This document shows, in pieces, positions 3,623-37,600 of a DNA stretch of 64,000 nucleotides. Positions within the stretch are counted from its first letter, which is position 1, and the number at the start of each line of letters is the position of its first letter. The translations under genes were made by a program, and so were the position numbers. The notes beneath the pieces are model-generated. The model saw only the letters and a list, made by a program, of their open reading frames with translations. It did not search any database and was not told the origin of the DNA. This DNA comes from Haliotis rubra (Eukaryota). The DNA lies in the NCBI RefSeq assembly GCF_003918875.1, contig NW_025766847.1, forward strand, positions 496,001 through 560,000, written 5' to 3'.

Positions 3623-4274
3623 ATGTCAACACCCGCCTGTGCTGACCCGATCTGCTCCCTGTCTGCCACTAACGTGGCGTCTGCTACTGCCTTATGGAAG
3701 GACGACCCAGTGTCTGCATCCTTCCAACTCTTCAGTCTTATCGAAATGAAGGATAGATTCCTCAAGCAAGTCCAGGCCATAGGTATGTACATTTGTTTTT
3801 GTGAGTTTGTCATTAACGGGATATAATTACGTGATTTTTCTCATTCACTATTACATCATATTCTGCAAAATTGGTTTTATAAGTCATTATTTTATTCGTT
3901 ACTGCACAATCCGTCAAAATATATATAAATTGGCAGACTAAAACACTAAAAAGCATCTGTTTTTTATTTCAGATGCCTACATCCTGGAACTGTCCGAGAA
4001 GATCGTGAGAGATGCAGACAATGGCGGCCATGTTGGACATGGGTTACTTCTGCTCAACAGGAAGTGTGTAGCTGAAGGTGTCCGTCAGGTGTACCTACGA
4101 CTGGCCACACACAAGTGGAGACAAGTCAGGCAGTGCAACAACTTCATCAGACAAAACTACGAGAACCAGGACCATCTTTCAGCAGCTGATGTGGATGAGT
4201 CACATGACCACGAAGTCACCCAGATTGCTCGTGGACTTAGTATGGAGTGTTGTGAGTTCCAGCGGTCATGCTAA
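3623..4274 (+). CDS. Unrecognised two-exon gene family, copy 1 (exons 3623-3782, 3973-4274; 153 aa, MSTPAC...[40 protein letters not shown]...[15 protein letters not shown]...CCEFQRSC)
   Basis: ACCATG start, AG|GTATGT donor, TTTCAG acceptor, phase-1 intron of 190 nt, open to TAA. TATA at 3529. Same structure in the paralogs. Confidence 0.85.
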
Positions 4275-5403
4275 TTGGATGAAACAATTCACAAACTGTC
4301 ATTATTGTGTAGATCCTGTCTCCACTGACGACATCTTGCTTATTGTTGTTATTGTTAAATATAAAGTGCTGTCATGACTACATGTATTCTGTGAATGGGA
4401 GTTCTATATGTGAAAATAAAATTGTCATTCTCAGTCTTGTGTTAAGGTTACAGAACAACTGCGTTTCATCTCCAAAATAAATACCTCATGGGAAATGTAT
4501 TAAGCGTTGAAATTAATTTCAATCAGATGAGTCATCTTCCCGAGCCAAGCCTATTTCTTCCTCGACTATTCGCTAAAAATATATGCGGGGATATAGGACT
4601 ATTAGTAAACGTTGTACAAAATCAATCAATTATGGTTCCTTAAATTTAAACAAATATTTTCGAAGTTCAATCAACTCGCTCACTTACTTTATAGAATGAT
4701 TTGGTTATATTCTGATTCCTGATTGAGCGTTTCCAAAGAAAAGTAATCTGAAATATCATGGTTGAAAACTAGACTACGATATAGTCTTGTGTACACTATT
4801 GGCTTTGGAAACTCAAGACCAGCTGACATCATTGGGCCATACGGGAGTTGTGTATTCTACCTTTATAGCAGTGTATGGTAGAAACATGCATATAGCAACG
4901 CTACCTACCATGCTTCGTATTTCGGCTAGCTCAAATATCCAGCTGTATGTTTAAAACGCCCGGGGTAATCTTCCTGTCAACACAGCAATTTAAAACATTA
5001 TTTTGACATGTGTCATTTTCTGGATTACACCAGTAACACTATTCCGGTGTAAGGAGAAACAGATCAACAGCAGATGTGAACAGATACTACCCATTGGCGA
5101 AGCATACTACTGGTATAAATGTTATATAACCTAAAGTGTCAGATCTTGTCAAATCCAGCAACTCACATATCAGGGCATTTAAATGTGTCTGAGTTACTAT
5201 AAGTTATAAATTCTTTGTCCACCACCACCCTGTACTAGCACGTACTGCGACATTTATACTTAGCGTGGCCGTTGTGAGGATTGATTTACGCTCTTCAAGA
5301 TAGTCAGTTAGTTCAGATAAACAAACTCTGACTGGATCCCAACGCCTAAAATATGCTCTTGGTCCCTCCTTAAGTCACGTGATAGTGAAGGGATAACTCA
5401 AAC

Positions 5404-9507: not shown

Positions 9508-10240
9508 CTAGCATGATCGCTGGAACGCACAACACTCCATACTAAGTCCTCGAGCAATCTTCGTCACCTCGTGGACATGTGACTCATCCACATCAGATGC
9601 TGAAAGATAGTCCTGGTTCTCGTAGTTTTGTCTGATGAAGTTGTAGCACTGCCTGACTTGTCTCCTCTTGTTTGTGGCCAGTCGTAGGTACACCTGACGG
9701 ACACCTTCAGCTGCACACTTCCTGTTGAGCAGAAGTAACCCATGTCCAATATGGCCGCCATTGTCTGCATCTCTCACGATCTTCTCGGACAGTTCCAGTA
9801 TGTAGGTATCTGAAATGAAACAGGAGAATATAAGTACTTGTACTGGTACATCAAAATAATACCCCACACTATACTACAACTTAATACAGTGATTCATATA
9901 CATGGGCAATATTTTAGAAGGAATTACTTCGCGCTCACGAAATATAGACGTTATTGGCCATAAAATGTGTCAATATTATACTCGCAACTTCTAAAATGCC
10001 ACTCAAAGATATTGTATGACGAAATTTAACCGGACAATTTGATTCAGAAAGAATTACCCCAGAATAAAACATGTACATACCTATTACCCGGACTTGTTCC
10101 AGGAATCTATCCCGCATTTCAATCAGACTGAAGAGTTGGAAGGATGCAGACAGAGGGTCTTCCTTCACCTGGACAGAAGATGGCGGCAGTTTAGTGGCAG
10201 CCGGTGAACAGATCTGGTCAGCACTGGTGGAGGTTGCCAT
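9508..10240 (-). CDS. Unrecognised gene family, copy 2 (exons 10240-10081, 9809-9508; 153 aa)
   Basis: Same phase-1 intron position (271-nt intron), intact frame to TAG, upstream cassette at 10327-10550, AATAAA downstream. Confidence 0.85.
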
Positions 10241-10326
10241 GGTTTCAAGTTAATTGCAATGATGTGTTTAAAAGAAGCACGGAGGACTGTTAGATATCCT
10301 TAGATGCGATATGAGTGGTGTCCATC

Positions 10327-10550
10327 AGACATTCTGCTTCTTTATACCTGCCTGTATGACACTGAGGCATGGAGTAGTCTGTGGGAGGAGAGGCAAGCTG
10401 TGTTATCCCATAGATGAGATTGGCAAGGATTATCCTGGTCAACCGCGCCTCACTGACCTAATCTCATCGTCCCCTCTCACTGAGAGTGCCGGTCTGGAAA
10501 GTGTTTGATTGGCAGGTGGATTATGGAGGTGTATAACATGTTGTTACAGC
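10327..10550 (-). promoter_or_regulatory. Family promoter cassette, copy 2
   Basis: Reverse complement contains CTGTAACAACATG, GAGATTAGGTCA, GATAATCC and GACTACTCCATGCCTCAGTGTCA...GGCAGGTATAAAGAAGCAGAATGTC. Confidence 0.65.
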
Positions 10551-11291: not shown

Positions 11292-11510
11292 CTGTAACAA
11301 CATGTCAATCACTAAGGTTCCTGCTCGACTCTTCCAATGAGACTGTGAGATTAGGTCACTGTGAGACTAGATCAGCCAGGATAATCCTCTACAGTCGCAT
11401 TAACTGAGAAAGCGGACTCCCCAATATACCTCATGTCCCGTTATGTGGAGTAGCTTGATACTACTCCATGCCTCAGTGCCACGCCGGCAGGTATAAAGAA
11501 GCAGAATGTC
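11292..11510 (+). promoter_or_regulatory. Family promoter cassette, copy 3
   Basis: Same blocks; TATAAAG at 11492. Confidence 0.65.
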
Positions 11511-11584
11511 GGAAAGATTCTTTATCTTAACTTGCAAGCAATCACCGAGTCTGGTTTAAACCTCGTTAAAGTTAACTTGAAAAT

Positions 11585-12499
11585 ATGGCAACCTCCACAT
11601 CTGCTGACCAGATCTGTTCACAGACTGCTTCAAAATTGTCGTCTGCTGCTGCATCATGTAACAACGACCCCGTATCTGCCTCCTTTCAACTCTTCAGTCT
11701 CATAGAAATGCAGGATAGCTACCTCGAACAAGCCCAGGCCATAGGTATGTACAGGAGTCAATCTGAAGTGATTTGTTCGCTTCCGTTCATCACTGTATGC
11801 AGAAATACTACTGCCAACAAAATAAGCTCAATAACTAGGTGACCGTCCAACGCGTATGAATTACTGTCTCATCTATAATGTACATGTACTTTGAAAAATA
11901 ATTTGGACCATAAAAACTTATAAACTTCTGTCTTGCTTCAGATACCTACATCCTGGAACTGTCCGAGAAGAATATGAATCACTGTATTAAGTTTAGTATA
12001 GTGTGGGTATTATTTTGATGTACCAGTTCATGTACTTATATTCTCCTGTTTCATTTCAGATACCTACATCCTGGAACTGTCCGAGAAGATCGTGAGAGAT
12101 GCAGCCAATGGCGGCCATGTTGGACATGGGTTACTTCTGCTCAACAGGAAGTGTGTAGCTGAAGGTGTCCGTCAGGTGTACCTACGACTGGCCACACACA
12201 AGTGGAAACAAGTCAGGCAGTGCTACAACTTCATCAGACAAAACTTCGAAAACCAGGACCATCTTTCAGCAGCTGATCTGGACGAGTCACATGACCACGA
12301 AGTCACCCAGATTGCTCATGTGGACTTAGTCTGGAAATCCCTTCAAGAGGATCCTGTAGAAGACAAATGGAGTGTTGTGCGTTCCAGTGCAACAACTTGA
12401 TCATGACTAGTTTCAGAGCTGAAGAGTCACATGAACGATGACACCCAGATTGCTCGTGGACTTAGTATGGAGTGTTGTGCGTTCCAGCGATCATGCTAG
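11585..12499 (+). CDS. Unrecognised gene family, copy 3, mosaic or garbled (exon 1 11585-11744; acceptors before 11942 and 12060; altered end at 12400, normal-type end repeated at about 12444-12499)
   Basis: Exon 1 is intact. The exon 2 start is duplicated, and the first acceptor leads to an early stop. The C-terminal region is interrupted by extra sequence. Confidence 0.6.
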
Positions 12500-12796
12500 T
12501 TTCAGAGAAGACAGAAAATGACTTGACGTTGAAGATATATGTCTGGACACTTATGGACATCTAGTGCTTTATGTAAATATTGTCATAACACTTGATGGTA
12601 TGGCCAATGCTACCAATTTTGTATTTATTTTGTAAATAAACATCTATATACTGAGTCTTTTCAGTTCAGCTGTTTCTGTTTTTAGAAGAAGAAGAGTTTA
12701 ATTTTGGACTTGAACAAATGTGTTCTTCGTCCCCAAAACACATGGTGTACAGGCCTGTAAAGGACAAAGGATATATTTACAGTCAAGTTATGGAGG

Positions 12797-15127: not shown

Positions 15128-15580
15128 CAAAAGGGCAAACCCTTTGATTTGTTACAGACTACACGAGAGATGCTGGAGTGCAAGCTATAGTTCGTCGTGC
15201 AGCATGTCTTCCTCTCTTGCCCACTGCACAGACTTAAGAACCACTTAGAGAAATTGACTGTCGGCTGCACAGACTTAAGAACCACTTGTTAGAAGGTTGC
15301 CAAACCAAGCTACAGTTCCTATTTATTAGGTGAATAATGATAAACATATAAAAGGTTAAAAAATGTAGTTGATAAAAAGAGAACTGATTTGACATTTGTG
15401 GAGGGGGCAATATCAACAATATATTCACTGTTATACTTACCAACAAAACAAACAATCATCTTGTTTTTGCTGCCATTATATAGATTACAACACTACCGCA
15501 AACTTAATTATGTAGGATGATTAATAACGTAACGTTAACCATTTCCAAACAAACACATCTCATCGTACATTATTGCATTG

Positions 15581-15797
15581 CTGTAACAACATGTTATACA
15601 CCTCCATAATCCACCTGCCAATCCAACAGTTTCCGGTCCGGCACTCTCAGTGAGAGGGGACGATGAGATTAGGTCAAAGAGGCAGGATTAACCAAGATAA
15701 TCCTTGCCAATCTCATTTATGGGAGAACTTGCCACTACTCTGACAGACTACTCCATGCCTCAGTGTCACACAGGCAGGTATAAAGAAGCAGAATATC
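15581..15797 (+). promoter_or_regulatory. Family promoter cassette, copy 4
   Basis: Same blocks; GGATTA-N7-TAATCC 15685-15703; TATAAAG 15779; TCATT Inr-like motif about 30 nt downstream. Confidence 0.65.
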
Positions 15798-15885
15798 TCA
15801 TGTGTGCCGTTCATTATCTCAACTCAAGCAAGCTGCGAGTCAAAAAGTCACCTGTTGAAATTAAAGCCGAAACAAATTTGAAACC

Positions 15886-16554
15886 ATGGCAACTTCCATC
15901 TCTCCTGGCCAGATCTGTTCACCATCTAGCACTAAACTGTCGTCTGCTCCCTCATGGAAGGACGACCCAGTGTCTGCCTCTTTTCAACTTTTCAGCCTTA
16001 TCGAAATGCAGGATAGATTCCTGGAACAAGTCCAGGCCATAGGTATGTTCCTATATTAATCTAAAGTAACTCTCTAAAATCAAATTCTTTGGTTAAATAG
16101 GTCAAAATTGTGTAACCAACCATGATAATAGCATAAGATATATACAAAAGTGATGCATGGGTACAGGTGATTTGACTAACTGATTGGTCTGTTAGACAAA
16201 TCGCTGTCTTCACTTATACACCAAGTACTAATAAATATCTGTTGTATTTCAGATGCCTACATCCTGGAACTGTCCGAGAAGATCGTGAGAGATGCAGCCA
16301 ATGGCGGCCATGTTGGACATGGGTTACTTCTGCTCAACAGGAAGTGTGTAGCTGAAGGTGTCCGTCAGGTGTACCTACGACTGGCCACACACAAGTGGAA
16401 ACAAGTCAGGCAGTGCTACAACTTGATCAGACAAAACTTCGAGAACCAGGACCATCTTTCAGCAGCTGATCTGGACGAGTCACATGACCATGAAGTCACC
16501 CAGATTGCTCGTGGACTTAGTATGGAGTGTTGTGCGTTCCAGCGATCATGCTAA
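15886..16554 (+). CDS. Unrecognised gene family, copy 4 (exons 15886-16042, 16253-16554; 152 aa)
   Basis: ACCATGG start, conserved splice sites, intact frame, TATA at 15779. Confidence 0.85.
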
Positions 16555-17114
16555 CAGTATCTGACTGACTGAGTTGGTGAAAACTACATCAAGCTGAAGC
16601 TGCATCTTTATTCAGCAGTATATAATAGTAAATACTGTACCACGCTTGGAGTGTTGTTCGTTCCAGCGATCATGCTAGCAGTATGTAAAATACTCATGGG
16701 ATGACTTGATGTTGAAGATATACGCCTTCACCGATGGGCATCTGGTGCTCATTGTAAATATTCTTTGAAACTCATGGATGGAATCTTGTGAGTTTCAATG
16801 ACCAAGCCAGCTGGACAAAATACTCTTTAACGTATGTTGATGAGTCTGTTTTCACTGACTGAAATCTAGTGCTTGTTATAAACATTGTTAATACCCGGTG
16901 ATGTCATAGCATCATAACACATTATTTATGTATCTTTAATAAACTGTTTAACAGCCAGTGTGTTGTTGTTGGTTTGTAACACCACACATTATATTGCCAA
17001 CCATTATTGATAAACCGGGGCTGTACCAAATTTATTAGTTTCAAGTTCTTGGAGCTTGAAATCGAATCAAAACATTTCAGGATTAACAGGTGCAGCATAA
17101 TTTCATTCTGTACA

Positions 17115-17985
17115 TATACATGTTGAAATATATTCAGCAACACCCGTATTTTCTCAGACTGAACAACTTTAATAAACTGGTGCAAAACATGTGTCAAGGT
17201 TTCCATACCATATGAATTTTGAAGTGAAAATAAAGAGTTGAGGAGAAACATAGCCAAGATTAGCACGACATAATCTGTTTTATTTGAAGATCAGACAAAA
17301 TCTGAATGGAAAACAGCACATCACTGACATCCTACACTGGGTTGTTGTTCCACATTTCCATGACCATCCTCTGAACACAAAGCCAGTCCTAGTGGACGAC
17401 AATGCTAAGCCAAATTGTGCATATGTCATTGGTGAGTTCTACGTTAAGAGGCAGCAGCGAACCTATAAAACTCCCATAGAGCATTATGGGTTGCAGAATA
17501 TGCCAAAGAGATTTTCCAGTACAAAAGACTGATGTATTGGAACTCCATCAAGAATGGAATGCAATATCACAATGATAATATTATTTAATGTCTGAACACA
17601 GTCAATGCGGAGGTTTGAATCTTTAACACTGAGGAGAGTCAATGACGTTATTGCATTGGGCAGAGGTTACAACAGACATTGCTCTCGGTTATTGATACTT
17701 ATGGGATTTCTGCAGGATTGTGTGCCAGAAACTTGAAAATGAACGCACTTATTAACACTATACAACCATAGTTATCAGTGCTACAAAATGTGTCAATGTT
17801 TTGCAGCGTTCACGAATAACTAGTTTTTTCATTCTTTAAGCATTTTCATTGCCATTTATTTACTCTTTGACAATCAGATGATCCAGATAGCAAGTTAAAA
17901 AAGGATAAGTTCCTGGGCTAAGTTAAGGTAAAATATTGATACTATGAAAAATAAGGGTGTTGCAATACTTTTTCCATGTGTATAT
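17115..17985 (+). mobile_element. Tc1/mariner deletion derivative (copies at about 30665-31535 and partial 21096-21372)
   Basis: VVPHFHDHPLNTKPVLVDDNAKP...PIEH transposase remnant; imperfect TIR core GCAACACCC / GGGTGTTGC with TA ends. Confidence 0.6.
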
Positions 17986-18089
17986 ATTAGAGATTTAGAG
18001 AAATGCTCTCTACTTTGAAAAATAAGGAACACCTTTTGGTAACAATATGTTTTATATAACATGATTAAAACAAGGGTAAATGTTGACCA

Positions 18090-18233
18090 TCAGTCTGTCT
18101 TCACTTTGTCCTGAAACAATGGGAGAGCAAGTCGGGCCCACTGGTCGTGCCATCTCACTGACTGAAACGACTTCACATTGTTTCGCAGTTTCTTCAATTC
18201 TGACTGGTTGTCTGGAAATCCCTTCAGGAGATC
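18090..18233 (-). pseudogene. ALG1: Duplicated, intact ALG1 last coding exon ([10 protein letters not shown]...QDKVKTD*) with its acceptor
   Basis: Reads the same as 31640-31783 (offset 13550), inside the segmental duplication. Confidence 0.88.
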
Positions 18234-18461
18234 CTGTGAAGACAAGCATTGATTTTTGAGTTTTCACACATTTGATACCTGTAATTCTATTCTTGACACC
18301 ATGCTTGAACACTGAAGAAGCAGGTTTATAGTGAGAATGACTGTTCTTTTACACATGTGAGATATGAAGAAAGATCTTAATGGGACAAATAACTGATCTC
18401 TTATAATGATTTGCACACTCACTTGTCTCTACAGTTTAGTTAAGGGGTATTCTTTTCTATT

Positions 18462-20040: not shown

Positions 20041-20240
20041 ATATTAATCTGCAGTAACTCTCTAAAATCAAATTCTTTGGTTAAATAGGTCAGAATTGTG
20101 TAACCAACCATGATAATAGCATAAGATATATACAAAAGTGATGCATGGGTACAGGCTATATGGCTAACTGATTGGTCTGTTAGACAAATCGCTGTCTTCA
20201 CTTATACACCAAGTACTAATAAATATCTGTTGTATTTCAG

Positions 20241-20542
20241 ATGCCTACATCCTGGAACTGTCCGAGAAGATCGTGAGAGATGCAGCCAATGGCGGCCATG
20301 TTGGACATGGGTTACTTCTGCTCAACAGGAAGTGTGTAGCTGAAGGTGTCCGTCAGGTGTACATACGACTGGCCACACACAAGTGGAAACAAGTCAGGCA
20401 GTGCTACAACTTGATCAGACAAAACTTCGAAAACCAGGACCATCTTTCAGCAGCTGATCTGGACGAGTCACATGACCATGAAGTCACCCAGATTGCTCGT
20501 GGACTTAGTATGGAGTGTTGTGCGTTCCAGCGATCATGCTAA
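20241..20542 (+). pseudogene. Unrecognised gene family, copy 5: exon 2 and most of the intron only; promoter and exon 1 replaced by a hairpin-bearing insertion
   Basis: 20041-21372 is nearly identical to about 16053-17390. Upstream lies the 19171-20040 element instead of exon 1. Confidence 0.75.
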
Positions 20543-24908: not shown

Positions 24909-26130
24909 ACTCGGCGTCATTAATGAAGGGTCAAGCTATTGGTAACACTATTTCTTAAAAGCTGTAAAATCTTCGTTTTTGTTAGAAATATACACGACTG
25001 AAGGTTTTACAAACTTTCTTAACGGTATAGAAAAACACATCAGTTCGTTAACGTCCGAAACATTTTGTTACAAATGGCACATTTTTTATTCAAATTGCCA
25101 ATATGGAAATCCACCTGCCACTTAATGTCAATGATTTGCCTGTGCATGGAAAGTGGAGGACAATGCACGTCACTGATGCTTTTTCAGTTTTTCACTGATC
25201 AGGTACCTGTTTCAAATCGCAGCTTAAAATGAGACGTTTTTTGACACTTGCTGAAAGGGGTCAAGCAATGGACCTTTTGGAATCTGGTCAAACTCAGCGG
25301 CAGGTTTCTGTCCGCTTTAATGTGAGTCAGGGTGCTATGGGTAGGCTGTAGCAGAGATTGCATGCAAATGGGTCCGTGGAATGTGCACGTCGACCAAGTC
25401 GCCCCAGAGTCACAGCAGACCGAGATAATAGGCACATGATAAACACAGCGTTACGTAACAGATTCCTTTACGCAGCAGATATTCAGACAGAACACTTCAA
25501 TGTTAACAATGTAAGGATATCCAGGAGCACCGTTCATCTACGTTTAAGGACAGCCGGACTCCGCTGTAGGCGACCTGCAGTTCGTCGACCACTAACACCA
25601 CATCACAGGTAGGCGCGTTTGAGATGTAGTAGACATCATGGCCGCTGGAATCAACATCCATGGCCGCGTGTGCTCTTCACAGGTGAAAGCGGATTCAATT
25701 TGTCCTTCCATGATGGTCGGTAGTGGATTTATCGTCGCAATGGAGAGCGAATCACAGATTCAACTGTGGCCCGCATAACCGATTTTGCGGGGAGTCTGTC
25801 ATGGTTTGGGCATAAATAACACCTACTGGACGTGCTCCACTGCACGTGGTCGACGGTAATCTTACTGGACAGCGTTATTGGGACGAGATTCTGACTCCTA
25901 TAGCAGTATCCTTCCCGCAAGCTATGCATGGCTTTTATGGTTGACCCTCTATACTGCAAGACAACAACGCTAGGCCTCATAGGGCCAGGATTGTCACGGA
26001 ATTCCTTAGGCAGCAGGGTGTAGAGCGGATGGAGGGGCCAGCATGCTCGCCAGACCTCAACCCAAGTGCGCATGCCTGGGATGACGACGTGTGTACACTT
26101 GTCACCCAACACAAGTGGATCTCCCTGTAC
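24909..26130 (+). mobile_element. Degenerate Tc1 transposon, 3' truncated
   Basis: HTH and RPSRPRVTADRDNR, RLRTAGLRCRRPAVRRPLT, LQDNNARPHRA, PACSPDLNP, with stops and frameshifts. Confidence 0.8.
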
Positions 26131-26161
26131 CCCGCAGAGTTCTACTAGAGGATTGAAATGC

Positions 26162-27940
26162 GTTGTTGTTGTTATTTGCTTTATTTAACGTCGCACGCAC
26201 AATTAAGGTATTTCTGCGACGGGGCAGTACACTTATTAAGAAATGAGGGGACCAAAAAATAGAAATTTTGAAAGAGCGGTGTTACTACCTTATTGTTTCA
26301 GGAAGTTGGATGAAGGTTGATTTTGTGTAGATAGTGATTAAGATTGCAATTTGCTAATCTTAATATGGTTATGGCAACATCAATTCGGCGTGTTTGGTGA
26401 TAATGTTTAGATTTTGTATTTAGTGTTTGTTGAATTTGGTAGAGTGGATAATGTTTTCCTATTATTTGCCAGTTATAATTGAATTTATTTATTATTATAT
26501 TGTTAACTTTATTTGTTAGGTCTGTTTTGGAGTAAGGTATTTATTATTTTATTTTTTGAGTGGAGTCCAAGTTTGGCAGCTTGGTCTCCCATTTTGTTGC
26601 CATGGACTCCGATGTGTGACGGGACCCAGATAAAATATATTTGATTATTTTTATTTTGGTGGTATAGTATTCTTCTGTATATGTTATTTATTAGATCTGG
26701 TCTTTTTGTTGTAGAGTAATTTTTGAGAGCTTGTATGGAGCTTAAGGAATCCTTTAAAATGCAGATGGTAGTGTTTGTTTGGTCAGATGTTGTTTGCAAG
26801 GCCTGAACTATGGCTGTGATTTCTGCTGTGAAGATACTGGAGTTTGCTGGGAGATTATTGGATTGTTTAAGGCTTTTGGGGGAATGTAGATACCAAAACC
26901 AGTATTGCCATTTTGGTCCTTGGATCCGTCAGTATAAATGTGAAGATTATCTTGTGGATTGTAATTTTGTTGTATGAATTCTTGCACTGTGAATTTATTA
27001 AGTATATACTGTTCAGTAAGTTTTGTGTTGGTCAAGTTTTTGGGCAGTAATGCTGGAGGAAGAGATTTGTAGTATGTGTTTGTATTACATTCTGTTGTAT
27101 ATACATCACGTTGTTGTTTAATTTCTTGTATTTTTTGTCCAAAAGGTTTTGGGTATTTGCCTTTATTGATAATGATTTTATTTTTAAGAGATGTTAGTGG
27201 TTTTCAGTTTTGTTTGTAATGGAGTTGTTAAGGGATCGAGTTACATATTTCATTGTACTTCTTTCCCATTCGAGAGTGAGGTCTAGTTCCCCGCATTCTA
27301 CCAATAATGCTTGGAGGGATGTTCCTGGGATGGCTCTAGTTATACATTTTAGTGCTTGGAATTGGATGGAATTAAGTTTATTTTAATGTGTTTGTGCCAT
27401 ATCTTGAAATATTTCGCAACCATAGAGAAATTTAGATTTGATGAGTGATTTATATAGTAGTAGTAATGTTTGTTTGTTGCTACCCCATTTACTGTGTGAT
27501 AGGTATCTAATAATGTTGAAATCTGACTTGCATTTTTCTTGTATGAATTGAATGTGTTTGTTCCATGTTAAGTGCTGGTCTAGGTTTAGACCTAGAAATT
27601 TTACTGCATCTGATTGCGGTAATTTTTGTTTGTTAACATAAAGATGTACGTTTTGTTTTCGTCGATGTTGTGCTTTGAATACTACAGTTGTTGTTTTAGT
27701 GGTAGAGAGTTGGAACCCCCATTGGTTGGTCCAGGTTCCAATATGGTTAAGTGCAGCTTGAATTTGTTTTTATGCTTTGTGTATATTTTTTTCATTAACC
27801 CATATTGCTCCATCGTCGGCAAACTGGGATTTGTTTATGTTTTTACTGAGGTTGTTGAATATATCATCAGCCATAAAATTGAAGAGGGTGGGTGAGATGA
27901 TACTTCCCTGGGGTGTGTCATTTTCTAGTGTATGGTTTTT
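26162..27940 (-). mobile_element. Decayed I-group LINE (RT C-terminus + RNase H)
   Basis: FLGLNLDQHLTWNKHI, WGSNKQTLLLLYKSLI, IYTDGSK, WVPSHIGVHGN..DQAAK; (CAA)n tail. The same 3' end occurs at about 3076 and 33390. Confidence 0.85.
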
Positions 27941-29123
27941 TAGATTTGATGGTCTATGGAGACCTCAAAGTCTCTGTCTGTTAGAGAGGCTGATACAAAA
28001 TTTAGAAGTGACCCTTTTAAACCTTTTCTTTGTAATAATTGTGACTTGGACGCGCGAGGAGGGTACAGAAGATATTGAATGGCCGAGTGCTCCATGACTG
28101 ACATTTTCATTTTGGGGGTTGCTCTATACAACTGATGTTTGCTAATGCTGTTTGAGCTTTTTGTCTGTATGCCACGATGTGTCACGTTTGTTAACACATT
28201 AAACATTAGGAAGACACTCTTAGTTCATTTCTGAGAAACTTTTCTTTACCTGTGAAAATCACATCAGTGCAAAATCAGAAGTATGGTTGATACATAAATC
28301 TCAACAGATACAAGGATATGTGTATAATGAAATGAATAACGAGTATTACAATTTTCTGGTCACGGTAGAATAGCAAGTTTTGTTCATAAATGATAAGATG
28401 ATGAAAGCAATAGATCAGTGTAAATATGTGTGTGTGTGTGTGTGTGTGTTTTATATGTTTAATCTTCCGCCTATATGGTTCGGGACAGCGAAACTCCCTA
28501 CAATTAGTGTCTTGATCACTTGCTATCTTGGTCCCGAGGTTAGCACAATTTCAATTGCTTCATATCAGTGCAGAATTCATCAATAATATACCACTATATA
28601 TGGCAGAAAGTTTCTGAACTTTCTTAGAACAAATTTCACAATATTAATTAACCTTTGAATGGTCCATATTCTTATTGGACCATTTATCCCAATTTATTCC
28701 ACTGAGTTTTAAGGGAAATTTTAATGGGAGGTCGAATTATATAGGTAAAAAGTATGAAATAGGTAAAGAGTAATAGAGATTTGGAATTTAATATAGATGT
28801 AGTGTAATAAATGGTTATTGTTATTGTTTTTGGTTTTGTGAACCAACCCATGTTCAAAAACATATTTATTAGGTGAATAATGATAAACATATAAAAGGTT
28901 AAAAAATGTAGTTGATAAAAAGAGAACTGATTTGACACTTGTGGAGGGGGCAATATCAACAATATATTCACTGTTATACTTACCAACAAAACAAACAATC
29001 ATCTTGTTTTTGCTGCCAGTATATAGATTACAACGCTACCGCAAACTTAATTATGTAGGATGATTAATAACGTAACGTTAACCATTTCCAATCAAACACA
29101 TCTCATCGTACATTATTGCATTG

Positions 29124-29340
29124 CTGTAACAACATGTTATACACCTCCATAATCCACCTGCCAATCCAACAGTTTCCGGTCCGGCACTCTCAGTGAGAGG
29201 GGACGATGAGATTAGGTCAAAGAGGCAGGATTAACCAAGATAATCCTTGCCAATCTCATTTATGGGAGAACTTGCCACTACTCTGACAGACTACTCCATG
29301 CCTCAGTGTCACACAGGCAGGTATAAAGAAGCAGAATATC
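29124..29340 (+). promoter_or_regulatory. Family promoter cassette, copy 6
   Basis: Same blocks; TATAAAG 29322. Confidence 0.65.
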
Positions 29341-29434
29341 TCATGTGTGCCGTTCATTATCTCAACTCAAGCAAGCTGCGAGTCACAAAGTCACCTGTGT
29401 CTGTTGAAATTATAGCCGAAACAAATTTGAAACC

Positions 29435-30103
29435 ATGGCAACTTCCATCTCTCCTGGCCAGATCTGTTCACCATCTAGCACTAAACTGTCGTCTGCTCCC
29501 TCATGGAAGGACGACCCAGTGTCTGCCTCTTTTCAACTTTTCAGCCTTATCGAAATGCAGGATAGATTCCTAGAACAAGTCCAGGCCATAGGTATGTTCC
29601 TATAATAATCTCAAGTAACTCTCTAAAATCGAATTCTTTGGTTAAATAGGTCAAAATTGTGTAACAAACCATGATAATAGCATAAGATATATACAGAAAT
29701 GATGCATGGGTACAGGCTATATGGCTAACTGATTGGTCTGTTAGACAAATCGCCGTCTTCACTTATACACCAAGTACTAATAAATCTCTGTTGTATTTCA
29801 GATGCCTACATCCTGGAACTGTCCGAGAAGATCGTGAGACATGCAGCCAATGGCGGCCATGTTGGACATGGGTTACTTCTGCTCAACAGGAAGTGTGTAG
29901 CTGAAGGTGTCCGTCAGGTGTACCTACGGCTGGCCACACACAAGTGGAAACAAGTCAGGCAGTGCTACAACTTCATCAGACAAAACTTCGAGAACCAGGA
30001 CCATCTTTCAGCAGCTGATCTGGACGAGTCACATGACCACGAAGTCACCCAGATTGCTCGTGGACTTAGTATGGAGTGTTGTGCGTTCCAGCGATCATGC
30101 TAA
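29435..30103 (+). CDS. Unrecognised gene family, copy 6 (exons 29435-29591, 29802-30103; 152 aa)
   Basis: Near-identical to copy 4, intact frame, TATA at 29322. Confidence 0.85.
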
Positions 30104-31639
30104 CAGTATCTGACTGACTGAGTTGGTGAAAACTACATCAAGCTGAAGCTGCATCTTTATTCAGCAGTATATAATAGTAAATACTGAACCACGCTTGGAG
30201 TGTTGTGCATTCCAGCGATCATGCTAGCAGTATGTAAAATACTCATGGGATGACTCGATGTTGAAGATATACGCCTTCACCGATGGGCATCTGGTGCTCG
30301 TTGTAAATATTCTTTGAAACTCATGGGTGGAATCTTGTGAGTTTCAATGACCAAGCCAGCTGGACAAAATACTCTTTAACGTATGTTGATGAGTCTGTTT
30401 TCACGGACTGAAATCTAGTGCTTGTTATAAACATTGTTAATACCCGGTGATGTCATAGCATCATAACACATTATTTATGTATCTTTAATAAACTGTTTAA
30501 CAGCCAATGTGTTGTTGTTGGTTTGTAACACCACACATTATATTGCCAACCATTATTGATAAACCTGGGCTGTACCAAATTTATTAGTTTCAAGTACTTG
30601 GAGCTTGAAATTGAATCAAGACATTTCAGGATTAACAGGTGCAGCATAATTTCATTCTGTACATATACATGTTGAAATATATTCAGCAACACCCGTATTT
30701 TCTCAGACTGAACAACTTTAATAAACTGGTGCAAAACATGTGTCAGGGTTTCCATACCATATGAATTTTGAAGTGAAAATAAAGAGTTGAGGAGAAACAT
30801 GGCCAAGATTAGCACGACATAATCTGTTTTATTTGAAGATCAGACAAAATTTGAATGGAAAACAGCACATCACTGACATCCTACACTGGGTTGTTGTTCC
30901 ACATTTCCATGACCATCCTCTGAACACAAAGCCAGTCCTAGTGGACGACAATGCTAAGCCAAATTGTGCACATGTCATTGGTGAGTTCTACGTTAAGAGG
31001 CAGCAGCGAACCTATAAAACTCCCATAGAGCATTATGGGTTGCAGAATATGCCAAAGAGATTTTCCAGTACAAAAGACTGATGTATTGGAACTCCATCAA
31101 GAATGAAATGCAATATCACAATGATAATATTATTTAATGTCTGAACACAGTCAATGCAGAGGTTTGAATCTTTAACACCGAGGAGAGTCAATGACGTTAT
31201 TGCATTGGGCAGAGGTTACAACATACATTGTTCTCGGTTATTGATACTTATGGGATTTCTGCAGGATTGTGTGCCAGAAACTTGAAAATGAACGCACTTA
31301 TTAACACTATACAACCATAGTTACCAGTGCTACAAAATGTGTCAATGTTTTGCAGCGTTCACGAATAACTAGTTTTTTCATTCTTAAAGCAGTTTCATTG
31401 CCATTTATTTACTCTTTGACAATCAGATGATCCAGATAGCAAGTTAAAAAAGGATAAGTTCCTGGGCTAAGTTAAGGTAAAATATTGCTACTATGAAAAA
31501 TAAGGGTGTTGCAATACTTTTTTCCATGTGTATATATTAGAGATTTAGAGAAATGCTCTCTACTTTGAAAAATAAGGAACACCTTTTGGTAACAATATGT
31601 TTTATATAACATGATTAAAACAAGGGTAAATGTTGACCA

Positions 31640-34600
31640 TCAGTCTGTCTTCACTTTGTCCTGAAACAATGGGAGAGCAAGTCGGGCCCACTGGTCGTGC
31701 CATCTCACTGACTGAAACGACTTCACATTGTTTCGCAGTTTCTTCAATTCTGACTGGTTGTCTGGAAATCCCTTCAGGAGATCCTGTGAAGACAAGCATT
31801 GATGTTTTAGTTTTCAAACATTTGATACCTGTAATTCTATTCTTGACACCATGCTTGAACACTGAAGAAGCAGGTTTATAGTGAGAATGACTGTTCTTTT
31901 ACACATGTGAGATATGAAGAAAGATCTTAATGGGACAAATAACTGATCTCTTATAATGATTTGCACACTCACTTGTATCTACAGTTTAGTTAAGGGGTAT
32001 TCTGTTCTACAGCCAACAGGTGACAACAATGGAATGGTGAACAGAGAATGTGACTGACAGTTGCCAATGTTGAACTCTACCCATGCATCGTTATTTCAGA
32101 ATACACTTAGTTATTGTTTGTCTTGCAAAAGTTTTCTGTCAAAATATGCAGCCAAACTTTATTTTTTCAATAAGCTAAAAACATGATGATAACTAGCTTT
32201 ATAATCAGGACAATCCAGCTTTTGAACTGTATTCCTTTCAAGTTTGAAATATTAATCTGCTGTAATATATTCACATTATAATGAAGTATAGTTACCTGTA
32301 ATTGGACTGACAACTGCTGACTGTCTTGGAACACCAGACCATTCTCTCCATGCTTGACCAACTCTGGCAGACTGGCAACACAAAACCACATGACAGTGCC
32401 ACATTAAACAAATTGTTTAAAATATCAAGTCATGCCATGAGTTTATGAAGAGTTATATTTCATCAGGAAGAAGGTCAGGCTGGATTCCTGTTTACACAAT
32501 ATTTCAGCAATACCATTGGGTCCATCACGTCACCTTGGACGACGAACATTGGTTGCTGGGGGCTTATTCTAACCCAGAACACCCATCAGGACACGCATAG
32601 GCTGCTCGAAGTCTTTTCTAACCAGGAATGCCCATAAGTAGGTTTCTGGGGTCCCTTACTAACCAGGAATGCCAATCAATAGATTCCTGGGTCCTATGCT
32701 AACCATCATTTGAAACCCTAGAAGGTCATTTGAAACACTAGAATGTCATTTGAAACATAAGAATGTTATTTATTGAAGTTGTTTCATGTTTGCCAGTGCT
32801 GAGTTTGGAAATGAATGCAATTAACTTACTCATTAGTGAGTGAGTGAGATCCCTTAAGTTGACTCATGACAAGCACAGGTTACTTTGGACCAAATCTACA
32901 CAACCAATCAGTTGTGTGTATTCACTGACCATTTAAAATCCACTGCACAAACTGGAAGGCCACATCCAAACATGTCCACTACTTTCATTGGTAGATCCAG
33001 CCCACTGGAGGACTTGTGAAGACACACGCCTATGTCAGCTGAGCCTGTGGGAGAAAGGAGAAACCTGCACACTATTGACGTATTTATACACACTTCTGTC
33101 TCCTTCGGTAGCAGACTCAACCCTTGTTACATACAAGAGGCACCTGCAGAGCCATGAGTTTTTATAGCTCAATTTGATTTTTCTGAGCAAACTTCAAATA
33201 ATCCATTAACAGGTTTCTCTCCAGAATGATAATTCAATGGATTGATAAATAAAGGGCTAGAGGGCTAGTTCCTGAGTGAAGAACTGACTAATTTAGATAA
33301 CTTAACCTGTGCTAATTGCATCCAGATACACAAAACCCTCCCAGCAAACATTCATGATGAAGTCATATGCACTGATCATGCTGATCTTCTGTTGTTGTTG
33401 TTGTTTGCTTTATTTAACATCGCACCCACAACAAAACAAAAACAACAAAAATACAACAACAGAGTATTAAGGGAAATTTGAATGGGAGGCCGAATTAAAA
33501 AGGTAAAAAATATGAAATAGGTACAGAGTAATAGAGATTTGGAATTTAATATATATGTAGTGTAATAAATGGTGTTTGTTATTTTTTTGGTTTTACACCC
33601 AACCCATGTTTAAAAACATATTTATTTAGTGAATAATGATAAACATATAAAAGGTTAAAAAATGAAGTTGATAAAAAGAGAGAATATTCGAAGTGTACAT
33701 ATATATTTGTCATCATAAAGTCTGTTTAATGCAACCCAACTTCTTCTGATTAGTTTAACAACATCTCACCCAATCTCAAACTATTAACACAATTTAGTTA
33801 AGCTCTGTCACCTGTGTAACTAATACTGAATAGTTAAAGAACATCTCACACAATCTCAAACTATTAACACAATTTAGTTAAGCTCTGTCACCTGTGTAAC
33901 TAATGCTGATTAGTTAAAAACATCTCACCCAATCTCAAACTATTAACACAATTTAGTTAAGCTCTGTCACCTGTGTAACTAATGCTGATTAGTTTAACAA
34001 CATCTCACCCAATCTCAAGCCAATAACACAATATAGTTAAGCTCTGTCAGCTCTTCTAAAATACCAATCAAACAGATAAGCTCTGTCACCTGTGTAACTA
34101 ATGCTGATTAGTTTAACAACATCTCACCCAATCTCAAGCCAATAACACAGGTTATTAGTCTGTCACCTGTGTAATCAATACTACTGTCAACAATCAGACA
34201 AAGCAAACAATGTGTTAGCCATGAGAGTTGAACAGCTGTGAGGGAAAAGTACCAAAGTAGTATTGTTTGTGCCAGTGTGATTTGTAAAGAAACATTTCAA
34301 TACATGATGTTCATTATCCAAACATCCTGCAACAGTATACTTTATCACTTGACATTTTACAATTAGTGTAGGCTAACATAAGAATATGTTCATTCATGGT
34401 CAGTAAAAACAGCACATGTAGTCAAATTTGACCTGTCTGTATTTATTACCTGCAATAATCCAGTTGTATATTCCCTGCTGCTTACAGCCAATGAATTTCT
34501 AACTATTTATAGATCACCCTAATATCAATGAGCTATACCAATACTAGCTATGAAACACCACTAGCTATTTCACCACCACTTTACAGCCAATGAAACACCA

Positions 34601-37600
34601 CTAACTATTTCACCACCACTTTACAGTCAATGAAACACCACTAACTATTTCACCACCACTTTACAGCCAATGATTTCAAACAATCAGTCAACACTAACTT
34701 TTCCTGTGCCAATGAAACATCATGGCTATTTCACCACCACTTTACAGCCAATGAAACACCACTAGCTATTTGCCATACAGTCAATGAAACTCACTAAATT
34801 TCACCACCACTTTACAAATGAAACACCACTTATTTTGTGACTAACTATTTCACCACCACTTTACAGTCAATGAAACACCATCTATCACCAATCTACCACC
34901 TACATCCAGCCACAGCCATGACTAGTTCCAGCCCAGAAACACCACTAACTATTTCACCACCACCAATCAGCAACATGTTTTTCCTCAGTTAGAACTGTGA
35001 TTAGCACATGATAATCCAATCAGTTGATTAGCCATGATAATCCTTGTTAATCCCATCTATTGGAGAACTCAGCTTGCCACTAATCCAACAGACTTCTCCA
35101 TGTCTCAGTGTCACACAGACAAGTATATAGAAGCAGAATGTCTGGTTCAAACCAGTCACATTCAAGCTTTGGATGTGAATTGTCAACTTGTCCTCCCAAA
35201 TCCATCCATTCTAACTCTGACACCATGGCAACATCCAGTTCCACCACCTGTGATCAGACCTGCTCCCTGGATAACTTGTCTTCTGCTGCTGCCGTATGGA
35301 AGGACGACCCAGTGTCTGCCTCCTTCCAACTTTTCAGTCTTATTGAAATGCAGGATAGATTCCTCAAACAAGTCCAGGTCATAGGTATGTATACATCTTG
35401 TTCTATAATCATTCATACCAACTAAGTGGTCCTTATAACCATATTTACTGTATTACCCAATATTCTCTTTTTATCCAAACATTCAATAAGCATAAAACTG
35501 TTGAAAAACGTGTACTCATTTCAGATCCCACTAAAGTACTAAAATATATTTCTGATTTCAGATGCCTACATCCTGGAACTGTCCGAGAAGATCGTGAGAG
35601 ATGCAGCTAATGGTGGCCATGTTGGACATGGGTTACTTCTGCTCAACAGGAAGTGTGTAGCTGAAGGTGTCCGTCAGGTGTACCTACGACTGGCCACACA
35701 CAAGTGGAGACAAGTCAGGCAGTGCTACAACTTCATCAGAAAAAACTACGAGAACCAGGACCATCTTTCAGCAGCTGATCTGGACGAGTCACATGACCAC
35801 GAAGTCACCCAGATTGCTCGTGGACTTAGTATGGAGTGTTGTTTCGTTCCAGCGATCATGCTAACAGTATCTGACTGACTGAGTTGGTGAAAACTACATC
35901 AAGCTGAAGCTGCATCTTTATTCAGCAGTATATAATAGTGCTTATTGTAAATACTGTACCATGCTGTTAAGTATTTTGTTTTTGTAAATAAACATCACAA
36001 TGTTCAGAGCTTCCTCTGTTTGTTTGCTCACAATGATCATTTATGTCACCTATAGCTTGTACACCTGCTCCAGATACTACTCACCAAGCAGGAGTGGATA
36101 GTCCTCAGATGTTAGCCATGGCAGACAGAACTTGACATGAGAGAAAGTCATCTCAGATATCTTCTTCATATAAAAGTCTTTCTGAGGACCTTTGCCTGTG
36201 GATAGACAACCTACTTTTGTAGGTACTTATTTCTGAAGTGCAAAGTAAAGAGTTCTGATCTTCAGAGATTCTGTATACTGGTAAAATTATTCAAAATGCT
36301 AAAACATATCTGTATGACCGCCAAATCGCCATAGTTACCAAACAGCGTAACATTTGGTGAGATACTGATAATGATAATCACTTTACAGTAGCCTGAAAAG
36401 AATGTCCTAACACTATTTTTCTCTTCATCAAATATATTAAAATTTGAAAAAGATATTCAGAGATGCCAACCCTGAATCTAATGAAAGTGGAGTCATGCCT
36501 AAATTTACAAAATTGTATACGGTAAAAAGAAAAAGGTTTTCATTCTCTTTAAGTAGTTATTTATAGAGAAAAAGGGGAGCAGATTTTGCATGTGGTTGGC
36601 ATCTCTGTATGATATTGTGCAGCCCGGCTGAGATTACTCTTTAGAACAGCAGGTTACAACAGACCCCTAATACCCACTGTGTAGTGTGACTTTAGTTGGA
36701 GAATTTACACTTTGAAATGCAAGCAGCCTCTACACACATGATGACCACTGTTTTCATGTCATCAGCTACACAGGTGAACCAAAGCCCGAAAACATGAGTC
36801 TTCTATAGGACCTACTCACCTGTAATCACACAGATCAGGTCAGGTAAGGACGAGGATTTTGTAGATACTGCCGCCTCATATTCTGCAAACGGGAATAGAA
36901 ATTCACTTTTTTCACTTGACAAAAATCCATTCACAACACATGATCCTTGTTCACACACGGTAAATAAAGCTGCTGTTGCATTTTATCATTGTAGGATATT
37001 TATATAGCGCATATATCCACCCCAACTCGTACATGATCATTTTCTCAAGTTCACACTTTCTTGATTCCCACACAGCTTGATTATTTGAAATGTTTATAGG
37101 ATTACTACATCTAATCTAATCATCTCTATGTTTCAACTACAGCATCAATAGTCATATTATAACAAACAATAAAATAGGTAGGTAGTATCGACGTCAGCAA
37201 CTGAGGCGAGCCAATCATCTCACTTTTACCGTTGTTACTTGGAAAACAGATTCACTAACACAGCCTAAATCTGCTTTACCCATTTTTCAATTCATAGTGT
37301 TAAAAACAGTAACATTAGAATAGTTCAAAACTAGTAACTTGTAGCTGATGTGTATACAGTAATCAGCTTGCACCATTGTTATAAGGTGTACGAGTTTCTA
37401 GTTAATTAGACTAATGGTATGTTACTGCAAAGCTTCCGATCTTGCCACAATGGCAGAGTGGTCAGCCGAATATTGTAAATTGAGTTGACAGTTGAAAGGT
37501 TAGCAAGTGTGGGTGTTTAGACGTCATATTCTTTTTCAATTTGTGTGAGTCTTCAAGGAATTTAAGGCTCTTAAGGGGAATTTTATGCATAGTTTGGATA

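What the first reader, a model, noticed from the sequence alone, without database searches (positions are those of the whole stretch)
3623..35878. Seven-copy cluster of an unrecognised two-exon gene for a ~153-aa helical protein, entangled with the 3' end of ALG1
Seen: six copies have an ATG in good context, the same phase-1 intron and a TATA cassette; a seventh has exon 2 only. Four are fully intact (copies 1, 2, 4, 6). The protein has a variable Ser/Ala/Cys-rich ~25-aa N-terminus with no signal peptide, then a 3/4-spaced hydrophobic helix ([27 protein letters not shown]), a GGHVGHG turn, a second helix ([21 protein letters not shown]), an acidic/His patch and a CCxFQRSC end. Inference: an intracellular helical-hairpin protein expanded for dosage or inducible expression. 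From memory it loosely resembles uncharacterised lophotrochozoan proteins with an 'EGVRNMxYEYA'-like motif; this is unverified. I cannot assign a named domain.
Basis: partly seen in the sequence, partly recalled or inferred. Interest (0 to 1): 0.85.

Follow-up and report, generated by a model that had tools for sequence, protein, structure and literature searches.

The report
Abalone helical-hairpin orphan gene cluster
This stretch of blacklip abalone DNA holds seven copies of a real, spliced gene for a small intracellular two-helix protein from a mollusc-only family with no known function. The second exon is kept nearly identical between copies, while the first exon has diverged over a long time.

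Summary
Seven copies of a two-exon gene lie at 3623-35878, and they are the only copies in the genome. Four are intact (c1, c2, c4, c6). One is exon 2 only (c5). Two have a damaged C-terminus (c3, c7).

The genome is Haliotis rubra. RefSeq already carries c2 and c4 as 'uncharacterized protein' LOC124280894 and LOC124280906. I found no protein entry for c1 or c6.

The protein has no hit in Pfam or the PDB. It does belong to a mollusc family found in abalone, scallops and oysters. Members share a core motif, a C-terminal motif and the same phase-1 intron. H. rubra also has an intronless paralog and an array of at least 21 copies of a 158-aa sister subfamily.

AlphaFold2 gives a confident long alpha-hairpin, with an acidic helix against a basic helix, and a disordered N-terminal tail.

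The new result is mosaic evolution. Exon 1 defines five paralog lineages older than the split from H. asinina. Exon 2 is homogenised within the species, which points to gene conversion.

Copy c7 sits in an ALG1 intron, and the same is true in H. asinina. The promoters share a TATA box and enriched TAATCC sites. A spliced exon1-exon2 contig exists in a related species.

The function is still unknown. My best guess is an oligomerising scaffold or adaptor.

The parts
3529..4421 (+). Copy c1, intact, 153 aa. TATA at 3529, exon 1 3623-3782, intron 3783-3972, exon 2 3973-4274, AATAAA at 4415. No matching protein entry was found in the public collection.
   Evidence: (best database hit only 86% identical)
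9508..10346 (-). Copy c2, intact, 153 aa, the only inverted copy. Exon 1 10240-10081, exon 2 9809-9508, TATA near 10346. It is identical to RefSeq LOC124280894.
11492..12499 (+). Copy c3. Exon 1 11585-11744, exon 2 from 12060. A 138-nt scrambled partial duplication brings a stop at 12398-12400, so the conserved C-terminal motif is lost. A decoy acceptor lies at 11942.
15779..16554 (+). Copy c4, intact, 152 aa. Exon 1 15886-16042, exon 2 16253-16554. It is identical to RefSeq LOC124280906.
20241..20542 (+). Copy c5, exon 2 only. The duplication junction at 20040 (matching 16052) lies inside the intron, so the promoter and exon 1 are missing.
29322..30103 (+). Copy c6, intact, 152 aa, two residues different from c4. 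Exon 1 29435-29591, exon 2 29802-30103.
35124..35878 (+). Copy c7. Exon 1 35225-35384, exon 2 35562-35878. One extra base near the end shifts the last 7 codons and removes the invariant arginine motif. It is nested in an ALG1 intron on the opposite strand.
15320..18459 (+). Duplicon that carries c4. It is 98.1% identical to 28863-32009 (the c6 unit). Its part 16052-17392 is 98.4% identical to 20040-21372 (the c5 unit). Its distal end copies part of the ALG1 3' region.
31392..46916 (-). ALG1-type glycosyltransferase gene. Recognisable exons lie at 46641-46916, 32911-33126 and about 32178-32436, with the 3' end near 31392. The region is colinear with the H. asinina 460-aa gene that carries Glycos_transf_1.
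25732..27769 (-). Remnant of a probable retroelement (degraded ORFs that I judged RNase H / reverse-transcriptase-like by eye) in the spacer between c5 and c6.
   Evidence: ORF translations only; not tested further

Best explanation
This is the complete Haliotis rubra cluster of one subfamily of a mollusc-restricted, uncharacterised gene family. Each gene is small. It has a TATA promoter and two exons split by one phase-1 intron whose position is conserved from abalone to oysters.

It encodes a soluble intracellular protein of about 17 kDa. The parts are a disordered Ser/Thr/Ala-rich N-terminal tail, a roughly 90-residue antiparallel alpha-hairpin with an acidic helix 1 packed on a basic helix 2, an acidic His-rich linker, and a short C-terminal helix ending in [FC]-C-x3-R-x2.

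The cluster evolves as a mosaic. Exon 1 (the tail and the first half of helix 1) has diverged into at least five paralog lineages that predate abalone speciation. Exon 2 (the rest of the hairpin and the C-terminus) is kept nearly identical among the copies within the species, and I attribute this to gene conversion. Birth and death continue, with the c4/c5/c6 triplication and the damage to c3, c5 and c7.

Inferred, not shown: the hairpin is a shared oligomerisation or partner-binding module, and the paralog-specific tails give each copy a different regulation or target. Homogenising exon 2 would keep the copies able to co-assemble or to bind the same partner. Expression is probably cell-type-specific and driven through the conserved TAATCC sites, which are the type bound by K50 homeodomain factors such as Otx and Pitx.

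My confidence that the genes and family are real and that evolution is mosaic is about 0.9. My confidence in the scaffold/adaptor mechanism is about 0.3.
For: - Copies and models.
- Identity with RefSeq H. rubra proteins.
- Family members in Haliotis, Pecten, Mizuhopecten, Argopecten, Saccostrea, Ostrea and Crassostrea, all unnamed and without Pfam domains.
- Conserved intron position: alignment A4, where genomic ORFs of oysters run into the intron just before D-S-Y-I-Q, and the subfamily B unit.
- Fold: (hairpin pLDDT 93-98), with charges of -5 and +5 on the two helices.
- Mosaic evolution. Exon 1 dS between paralogs is 0.3-0.97, against 0.02-0.13 in exon 2. Exon 2 dS is 0.02-0.07 within H. 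rubra (c2 excluded) but 0.09-0.15 to H. asinina whether or not the pair is orthologous. Exon 1 dS is 0.11-0.27 for orthologs and 0.42-0.71 for non-orthologs. The exon 1 tree pairs c3 with asinina P0006 at 99/98, while the exon 2 tree is a star. High identity starts about 28 nt before the acceptor and, for c1, ends at the stop codon.
- Synteny with H. asinina, including c7 inside ALG1.
- Promoters: 17 of the window's 36 TAATCC sites lie in the six 400-bp promoters. The site is also present in the H. asinina orthologs and the intronless paralog.
- Spliced form: a 236-nt contig at depth 449 joins exon 1 to exon 2 with GT..AG ends. It comes from a run that covers exons only.
Against: - There is no functional evidence at all: no named homolog, no specific structural relative, and no supported homodimer.
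- The synonymous-site counts are small, about 57 sites in exon 2. Strong constraint on the exon 2 nucleotide sequence could mimic part of the signal.
- The spliced contig comes from a related species, in a run only guessed to be RNA.
- H. rubra's own guessed-RNA run showed almost no coverage.
- The K50 homeodomain reading rests on a 6-mer motif alone.
- The third helix is modelled with low confidence (pLDDT 54-61).
Confidence: 0.6

Rival explanations
1. Dosage or inducible stress and immune gene battery. The copies would exist to give fast, high-level expression of a protective cytosolic protein after heat, hypoxia, desiccation or infection.
For: The genes are compact, with TATA promoters and one short intron. 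There is an intronless paralog with its own TATA box. The sister subfamily is amplified to at least 21 near-identical 2.4-kb units. The spliced contig has high word depth in one run.
Against: No heat-shock element, NF-kB, AP-1 or metal-response motif is conserved in the promoters. Five of the copies are old, differentiated paralogs rather than recent dosage duplicates. No condition-specific expression data could be obtained.
Confidence: 0.15
2. Germline- or embryo-specific amplified gene family, comparable in behaviour to ampliconic testis coiled-coil genes. Copy number and gene conversion would be driven by gamete or early-embryo dosage, or by genetic conflict.
For: The family forms tandem arrays with homogenisation. 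It forms clusters in several molluscs. The N-terminal tail has dN/dS near or above 1 between some paralogs.
Against: The paralog-specific tails are retained between H. rubra and H. asinina, which argues against a rapid arms race. There is no tissue information.
Confidence: 0.12
3. Metal- or redox-binding small protein that uses the GGHVGHG turn, the ESHDHE patch and the C-terminal cysteines.
For: The abalone subfamily has six histidines and six cysteines, concentrated in the turn, the linker and the tail.
Against: Apart from one cysteine in the C-terminal motif, kept in about three-quarters of the aligned sequences, these His and Cys positions are not conserved in the scallop, oyster or subfamily B relatives. 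The invariant or nearly invariant positions are G89, K101 and R151.
Confidence: 0.05
4. Not a functional gene family: transposon ORFs, pseudogenes, or falsely duplicated haplotypes in the assembly.
For: c3, c5 and c7 are damaged. c4 and c6 differ by only 1.9% over 3.1 kb, which is close to allelic divergence. Retroelement debris lies between them.
Against: The helix 1 part has dN/dS of 0.03-0.25 between paralogs. The intron is conserved across Mollusca. The orthologous cluster in H. asinina is syntenic. A spliced contig exists. There are no transposon domains. The truncated c5, with different flanks between c4 and c6, does not fit a haplotype artefact.
Confidence: 0.03

Closest known systems
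RefSeq models 'uncharacterized protein' LOC124280894 and LOC124280906 (H. rubra), with orthologs in H. asinina, H. cracherodii and H. rufescens
   Same: They are the same genes. P0008 is 100% identical to c2 and P0062 is 100% identical to c4. The orthologs are 75-86% identical, with the same length and exon structure.
   Different: They are only automatic predictions, with no name, domain or study behind them. I found no protein entry matching c1 or c6.
158-aa abalone sister subfamily (P0016/P0022), plus the scallop and oyster 130-210-aa 'uncharacterized proteins'
   Same: They share the core motif L-x-[RK]-[RK]-x4-G-[VI]-[KR]-x2-[YF]...K-W, the C-terminal motif [FC]-C-x3-R-x2-end, the phase-1 intron before the D codon, and tandem clustering.
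   Different: Identity is only 18-28%. Subfamily B has a long acidic insert and forms a regular 2.4-kb array of at least 21 copies. The scallop proteins carry repeated acidic N-terminal tails. The TAATCC promoter sites were not seen in the one subfamily B unit I read by eye.
ESCRT-III / PspA / Vipp1 alpha1-alpha2 hairpin, and other long alpha-hairpins (ING N-terminal domain, prefoldin)
   Same: The predicted hairpin has similar length and geometry. VIA-align Z is 10-12 at rmsd 1-3 A. The Foldseek top hits are Vipp1, at E 0.25 or worse.
   Different: There is no sequence or profile similarity. The Z values form a flat list typical of any long hairpin. The protein is much shorter than ESCRT-III and lacks helices 3-5 and the MIM. 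This is a resemblance in shape only.
Tandem multigene families that evolve by exon-limited gene conversion (concerted evolution)
   Same: Paralogs within a species are more alike at synonymous sites than orthologs between species, and the tract boundaries are sharp.
   Different: Here only exon 2 is homogenised, while exon 1 of the same genes keeps its old orthology. I know of no description of this for this family. That statement rests on my own knowledge and on four literature searches by identifier or accession that found nothing.

Membership tests
Mollusc 'hairpin' family (unnamed; abalone, scallop and oyster uncharacterised proteins) | Significant sequence similarity across the hairpin and the C-terminus | tested here: met
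   phmmer E-values range from 1e-10 to 4e-4 to scallop, oyster and subfamily B representatives. Profile E-values range from 1e-19 to 1e-50.
Mollusc 'hairpin' family (unnamed; abalone, scallop and oyster uncharacterised proteins) | Invariant or nearly invariant G89, K101 (in K-W) and R151, the third residue from the C-terminus | tested here: met
   Alignments A2 and A4. The residues are present in c1, c2, c4, c5 and c6. R151 is lost in c3 and c7.
Mollusc 'hairpin' family (unnamed; abalone, scallop and oyster uncharacterised proteins) | Phase-1 intron immediately before the D of D-x-Y-[IL] | tested here: met
   Window copies, subfamily B unit, and oyster genomic ORFs that run into the intron. 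The paralog on contig C2178 is the exception and has no intron.
ESCRT-III (Snf7, PF03357) / PspA_IM30 (PF04012) | Match to the family profile at or above the Pfam gathering score | tested here: not met
   Neither family was hit by any of the 37 family members, even at E up to 1.
ESCRT-III (Snf7, PF03357) / PspA_IM30 (PF04012) | A structural match that stands clearly above unrelated helical proteins | tested here: not met
   Foldseek E is 0.25 or worse. The VIA-align Z list is flat at 10-12 and is shared with designed hairpins, colicin, SMC and others.
GOLGA2L5 (PF15070) | Pfam gathering score of 29.2 bits | tested here: not met
   The score is 18 bits at E 0.0014, which is coiled-coil noise.
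Transposon-encoded ORF | Transposase, reverse-transcriptase or integrase domain, or terminal repeats around each copy | tested here: not met
   There are no such Pfam hits. The copies sit at syntenic positions in H. asinina. I did not search for terminal repeats.
Secreted abalone helical proteins (lysin / sp18 type) | N-terminal signal peptide | tested here: not met
   There is no hydrophobic N-terminal core. KD9 is at most 0.82 for c2 and c4 (the two window copies scored), and KD19 is at most 0.55 over the whole protein. This is a heuristic check, not SignalP.

The most novel reading that the evidence does not exclude
The family is an undescribed, mollusc-wide protein module that would merit a new Pfam entry. 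Its hairpin is a self- or partner-assembly unit. In abalone it would be kept interchangeable between paralogs by exon-2-limited gene conversion, while anciently diverged N-terminal tails give each paralog its own role. The subfamily would be a direct target battery of a K50 homeodomain factor (Otx or Pitx type), marking a specific larval or sensory cell type such as a ciliary band or photoreceptors.
Probability: 0.2. Interest if true: 0.6.

Novelty: new variant of a known kind. Interest (0 to 1): 0.4.

Why it matters
Taxon-restricted gene families make up much of the unexplained part of mollusc genomes. This family is small and easy to work with. It is present in abalone, scallops and oysters, all farmed species, and it is amplified to dozens of copies in abalone.

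It also gives an unusually clean natural example of gene conversion confined to one exon. The same genes show old orthology in exon 1 and within-species homogenisation in exon 2. That makes a direct test possible of whether homogenisation preserves a shared interaction surface.

It does not yet bear on any long-standing open question, because the function is unknown.

Tried and rejected
**Sequence and family searches**
- Pfam on the single protein and on all 37 family members found nothing above noise.
- PDB searches by sequence and by profile found nothing.
- The ESM Atlas search by features gave no usable hit for three family members.

**Structure searches**
- Foldseek against the PDB and VIA-align wide returned only generic hairpins.

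**Complex prediction**
- Complex prediction on a homodimer of residues 27-153 gave no verdict, with a score of 0.00. This is evidence neither for nor against binding.

**Literature**
- Full-text searches for 12 LOC or UniProt identifiers and two run accessions returned no papers.

**ALG1 exons**
- Pfam and PDB searches on single ALG1 exon fragments gave no hit because the fragments are too short. ALG1 was confirmed instead through synteny with the annotated H. asinina gene.

**An unexplained contig**
- In run X10, 27 letters sit upstream of exon 2 in one contig. I could not find them in the window or in the whole assembly, so this stays unexplained.

**Readings considered and rejected**
- BH3-only protein: rejected by eye, no G-D core.
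- C-terminal prenylation (CaaX or Rab CC/CXC): rejected by eye, and the terminal cysteine is not conserved.
- Mitochondrial presequence: rejected because the tail is acidic.
- Heat-shock regulation: rejected because there is no heat-shock element.

**Taxonomy of unnamed relatives**
- The ENA relatives P0011 and P0013 come from one unlabelled assembly, so their taxon could not be identified.
Full report
**What is there**

The spliced product of copy 1 (3623-3782 joined to 3973-4274) is a 153-aa protein. tblastn of this protein against the window finds seven loci and no others. A six-frame search of the whole assembly finds no further copy of this subfamily.

Reading each locus gives these models:
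- c1, c2 (the only inverted copy), c4 and c6 are intact, at 152-153 aa.
- c3 has a scrambled 138-nt partial duplication in exon 2. It brings a stop at 12398-12400, before the conserved C-terminal motif.
- c5 is exon 2 alone. A duplication junction (16052 matching 20040) lies 10 nt inside the intron.
- c7 carries one extra base that replaces the last seven codons.

**Which genome, and what is already annotated**

Two database proteins named 'uncharacterized protein' of Haliotis rubra match the window exactly. LOC124280894 is identical to c2 and LOC124280906 is identical to c4. The window is therefore blacklip abalone, and two of the four intact genes are already automatic RefSeq models. No entry identical to c1 or c6 turned up. 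The best hit for c1 was 86% identical, and the fully listed 90% cluster holds no c6.

**The family**

Pfam, the PDB by sequence and by profile, and the ESM Atlas give nothing.

An exhaustive phmmer search of 1.84 billion representatives gives 11 hits. Profile searches add more. One of the 11, a 1274-aa fish 'tenascin-like' protein at E 9.8e-5, I set aside as a chance match. Every other named hit is a mollusc 'uncharacterized protein'. The species are:
- four Haliotis species;
- the scallops Pecten, Mizuhopecten and Argopecten;
- the oysters Saccostrea, Ostrea and Crassostrea.

The alignments show three shared features:
- a core motif L-x-[RK]-[RK]-x4-G-[VI]-[KR]-x2-[YF]...K-W;
- a C-terminal motif [FC]-C-x3-R-x2-end;
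- G89, K101 and R151 invariant or nearly invariant.

The phase-1 intron just before the D of D-x-Y-[IL] is shared by a 158-aa abalone sister subfamily. By inference it is also shared by oysters, because their genomic ORF predictions run into the intron at exactly that point.

H. rubra also holds:
- an intronless 148-aa paralog with its own TATA box on contig C2178;
- at least 21 near-identical 2.4-kb tandem units of the 158-aa subfamily on contigs C69 and C2770.

Consecutive LOC numbers in oysters, and two copies nested in an AAA-ATPase gene in Crassostrea angulata, show that clustering is typical of the family.

**The protein**

With a 37-sequence alignment, AlphaFold2 gives the following:
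- helices 29-69 and 74-121 at pLDDT 93-98;
- a disordered tail at residues 1-25;
- a disordered acidic linker at 122-129;
- a third helix at 131-152 with low confidence (pLDDT 54-61).

Helix 1 has a net charge of -5 and helix 2 of +5. The whole protein is 17 kDa with pI 6.0. No hydrophobic stretch could serve as a signal peptide or membrane segment.

Structure searches return only a flat list of generic long hairpins: Vipp1/ESCRT-III, ING, prefoldin, designed hairpins and colicin. Foldseek E is 0.25 or worse and VIA-align Z is 10-12. The fold is a plain alpha-hairpin and points to no specific relative.

**Mosaic evolution (the main new result)**

Between paralogs in the window, synonymous divergence differs sharply by exon:
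- exon 1: dS 0.3-0.97;
- exon 2: dS 0.02-0.13.

At the DNA level, c1 and c4 are 76% identical over the promoter and exon 1 and cannot be aligned in the intron. They are then 95% identical from 28 nt before the acceptor to the stop codon.

Comparison with an orthologous H. asinina locus shows that this is not just slow evolution:
- Exon 2 dS is 0.02-0.07 among H. rubra copies (c2 excluded), but 0.09-0.15 to the H. asinina copies whether or not the pair is orthologous.
- Exon 1 dS is 0.11-0.27 for orthologous pairs and 0.42-0.71 for non-orthologous pairs.

The exon 1 tree supports the same picture. It pairs c3 with asinina P0006 (99/98) and c1 with P0001, places c2 beside P0007, and groups c4/c6 with a H. 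rufescens protein. The exon 2 tree is an unresolved star. An intact H. asinina ortholog of c7 also exists (P0067).

So at least five paralog lineages, each with its own N-terminal tail, predate the H. rubra / H. asinina split. Exon 2 has been homogenised within the species since then. Gene conversion limited to exon 2 is the simplest explanation. The inverted copy c2 is the least homogenised.

Within exon 1, the helix part is under strong purifying selection (dN/dS 0.03-0.25). The tail is near neutral between paralogs (0.3-1.6).

Two caveats apply. Exon 2 has only about 57 synonymous sites. The between-species comparison uses only two H. asinina copies.

**Context**

ALG1-type exons lie on the minus strand at 46641-46916, 32911-33126 and about 32178-32436. 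The stretch 31392-45661 is colinear with the H. asinina locus. There, a 460-aa gene with Glycos_transf_1 runs on the minus strand, and the c7 ortholog sits in one of its introns on the plus strand. The link with ALG1 is therefore real and conserved, but it concerns c7 only.

H. asinina has a single c4-type gene between the c3-type gene and the ALG1 3' end. H. rubra has three units:
- c4 (15320-18459);
- a 5'-truncated c5;
- c6 (28863-32009, 98.1% identical to the c4 unit).

Probable retroelement debris lies between c5 and c6. The end of the c4 unit copies part of the ALG1 3' region. The truncated middle unit with different flanks argues for a real triplication in the H. rubra lineage rather than a haplotype artefact. 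Spanning long reads were not available to settle this.

**Promoters**

The six promoters share three features:
- a TATA box 93-113 nt before the ATG;
- an almost invariant 45-nt block just upstream of it;
- CCAAT boxes.

They also share TAATCC/GGATTA sites. Seventeen of the window's 36 such hexamers fall in these six 400-bp promoters. One position, at about -190, is conserved in all six copies and in the two H. asinina promoters examined, and the intronless paralog carries a TAATCC site at -232. From established knowledge, TAATCC is the site of K50 homeodomain factors such as Otx, Pitx and Gsc. This is a lead and not a demonstration.

No heat-shock element, NF-kB, AP-1 or metal-response motif is conserved.

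**Expression**

Two runs of the probable source species, or a very near one, cover introns and spacers and so are genomic DNA (X1 and X3).

A run of a related species (X17, guessed to be RNA) covers only the exons. It holds a 236-nt contig, at word depth 449, that joins exon 1 to exon 2 with the intron removed at GT..AG.

A guessed-RNA run of the source species (X10) holds only a thin exon 2 contig. That contig is preceded by 27 letters found nowhere in the assembly, which I cannot explain.

An oyster Logan contig encodes the full spliced 133-aa homolog.

**How it most likely works**

Shown:
- The genes are real.
- The hairpin is under strong purifying selection.
- The tails are paralog-specific and old.
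- Exon 2 is homogenised within the species.

Inferred:
- The charge-complementary hairpin and the C-terminal helix form a common assembly or partner-binding module.
- The disordered Ser/Thr-rich tails provide paralog-specific regulation or targeting.
- Homogenisation keeps the modules interchangeable.

I give this mechanism about 0.3. A homodimer prediction gave no verdict, which counts neither way. The rivals are a stress- or immune-inducible battery, a germline or embryo amplicon, and a metal-binding protein. They are listed in the rival explanations with the evidence for and against each. An artefact, transposon or pseudogene reading is largely excluded.

**Novelty and verdict**

The family has no Pfam entry, no solved relative, and no paper that I could find by identifier. 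However, two of the genes are already public predictions, and the fold is simple.

What is new:
- the family is defined across molluscs, with a conserved intron;
- evolution is exon-limited and concerted;
- c7 is nested in ALG1, and this is conserved;
- the promoters carry a TAATCC signature.

Interest is moderate until a function or an expression domain is known.

Noticed in passing
window 19895-20028: A 61-nt inverted repeat, 90% complementary with a 12-nt loop, lies 12 nt upstream of the duplication junction (20040) that truncates copy c5. It may be a hairpin or a transposon end involved in the rearrangement. Another first-stage note (s1-335152) flagged the same element.
   Followed up: partly
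window 51167-51580 and 51930-54342: A 31-bp minisatellite with about 13 and 76 copies, 81-85% matches. It flanks a short ORF with an ankyrin-repeat-like translation at 51740-51964.
   Followed up: no
G000 contig C69:9600-53600 and C2770:377700-387900 (loci L012-L015): At least 21 near-identical (95-99% at the protein level) head-to-tail 2.4-kb units. Each carries a two-exon gene for the 158-aa sister subfamily, with the same phase-1 intron as the window genes.
   Followed up: partly
L008 (G000 C2178:1422015-1425317), ORF at 1363-1806: An intronless 148-aa paralog, 60% identical over exon 2, with its own TATA box and a TAATCC site. An ortholog from another abalone is on Logan contig L017. The 200-aa database ORF there starts inside the TATA box, so it is probably too long.
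   Followed up: partly
window 12058-12304 (run X10 contig): A contig of a guessed-RNA run matches c3 exon 2 from the acceptor onward. It is preceded by 27 letters absent from the window and from the whole assembly. These could be an alternative 5' exon in an assembly gap, another allele, or a chimeric contig.
   Followed up: partly
window 61690-62199, 58999-59379 and 25352-25609: ORF fragments that look like Tc1/mariner-type transposases, judged by eye from the translations. They are scattered outside the cluster.
   Followed up: no
window 5403-7072 vs 43392-41716, and 7593-7938 vs 40762-40413: An inverted pair of repeats of about 1.7 kb, 95-97% identical. One arm lies between c1 and c2 and the other inside ALG1 introns. 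They are probably copies of one mobile element.
   Followed up: no
L021 (Crassostrea angulata CM046778.1): Two oyster family members (133 aa each) are nested, on the opposite strand, inside a 1012-aa double-AAA gene with a nucleolin-binding domain (NVL-like). This echoes c7 nested in ALG1.
   Followed up: no
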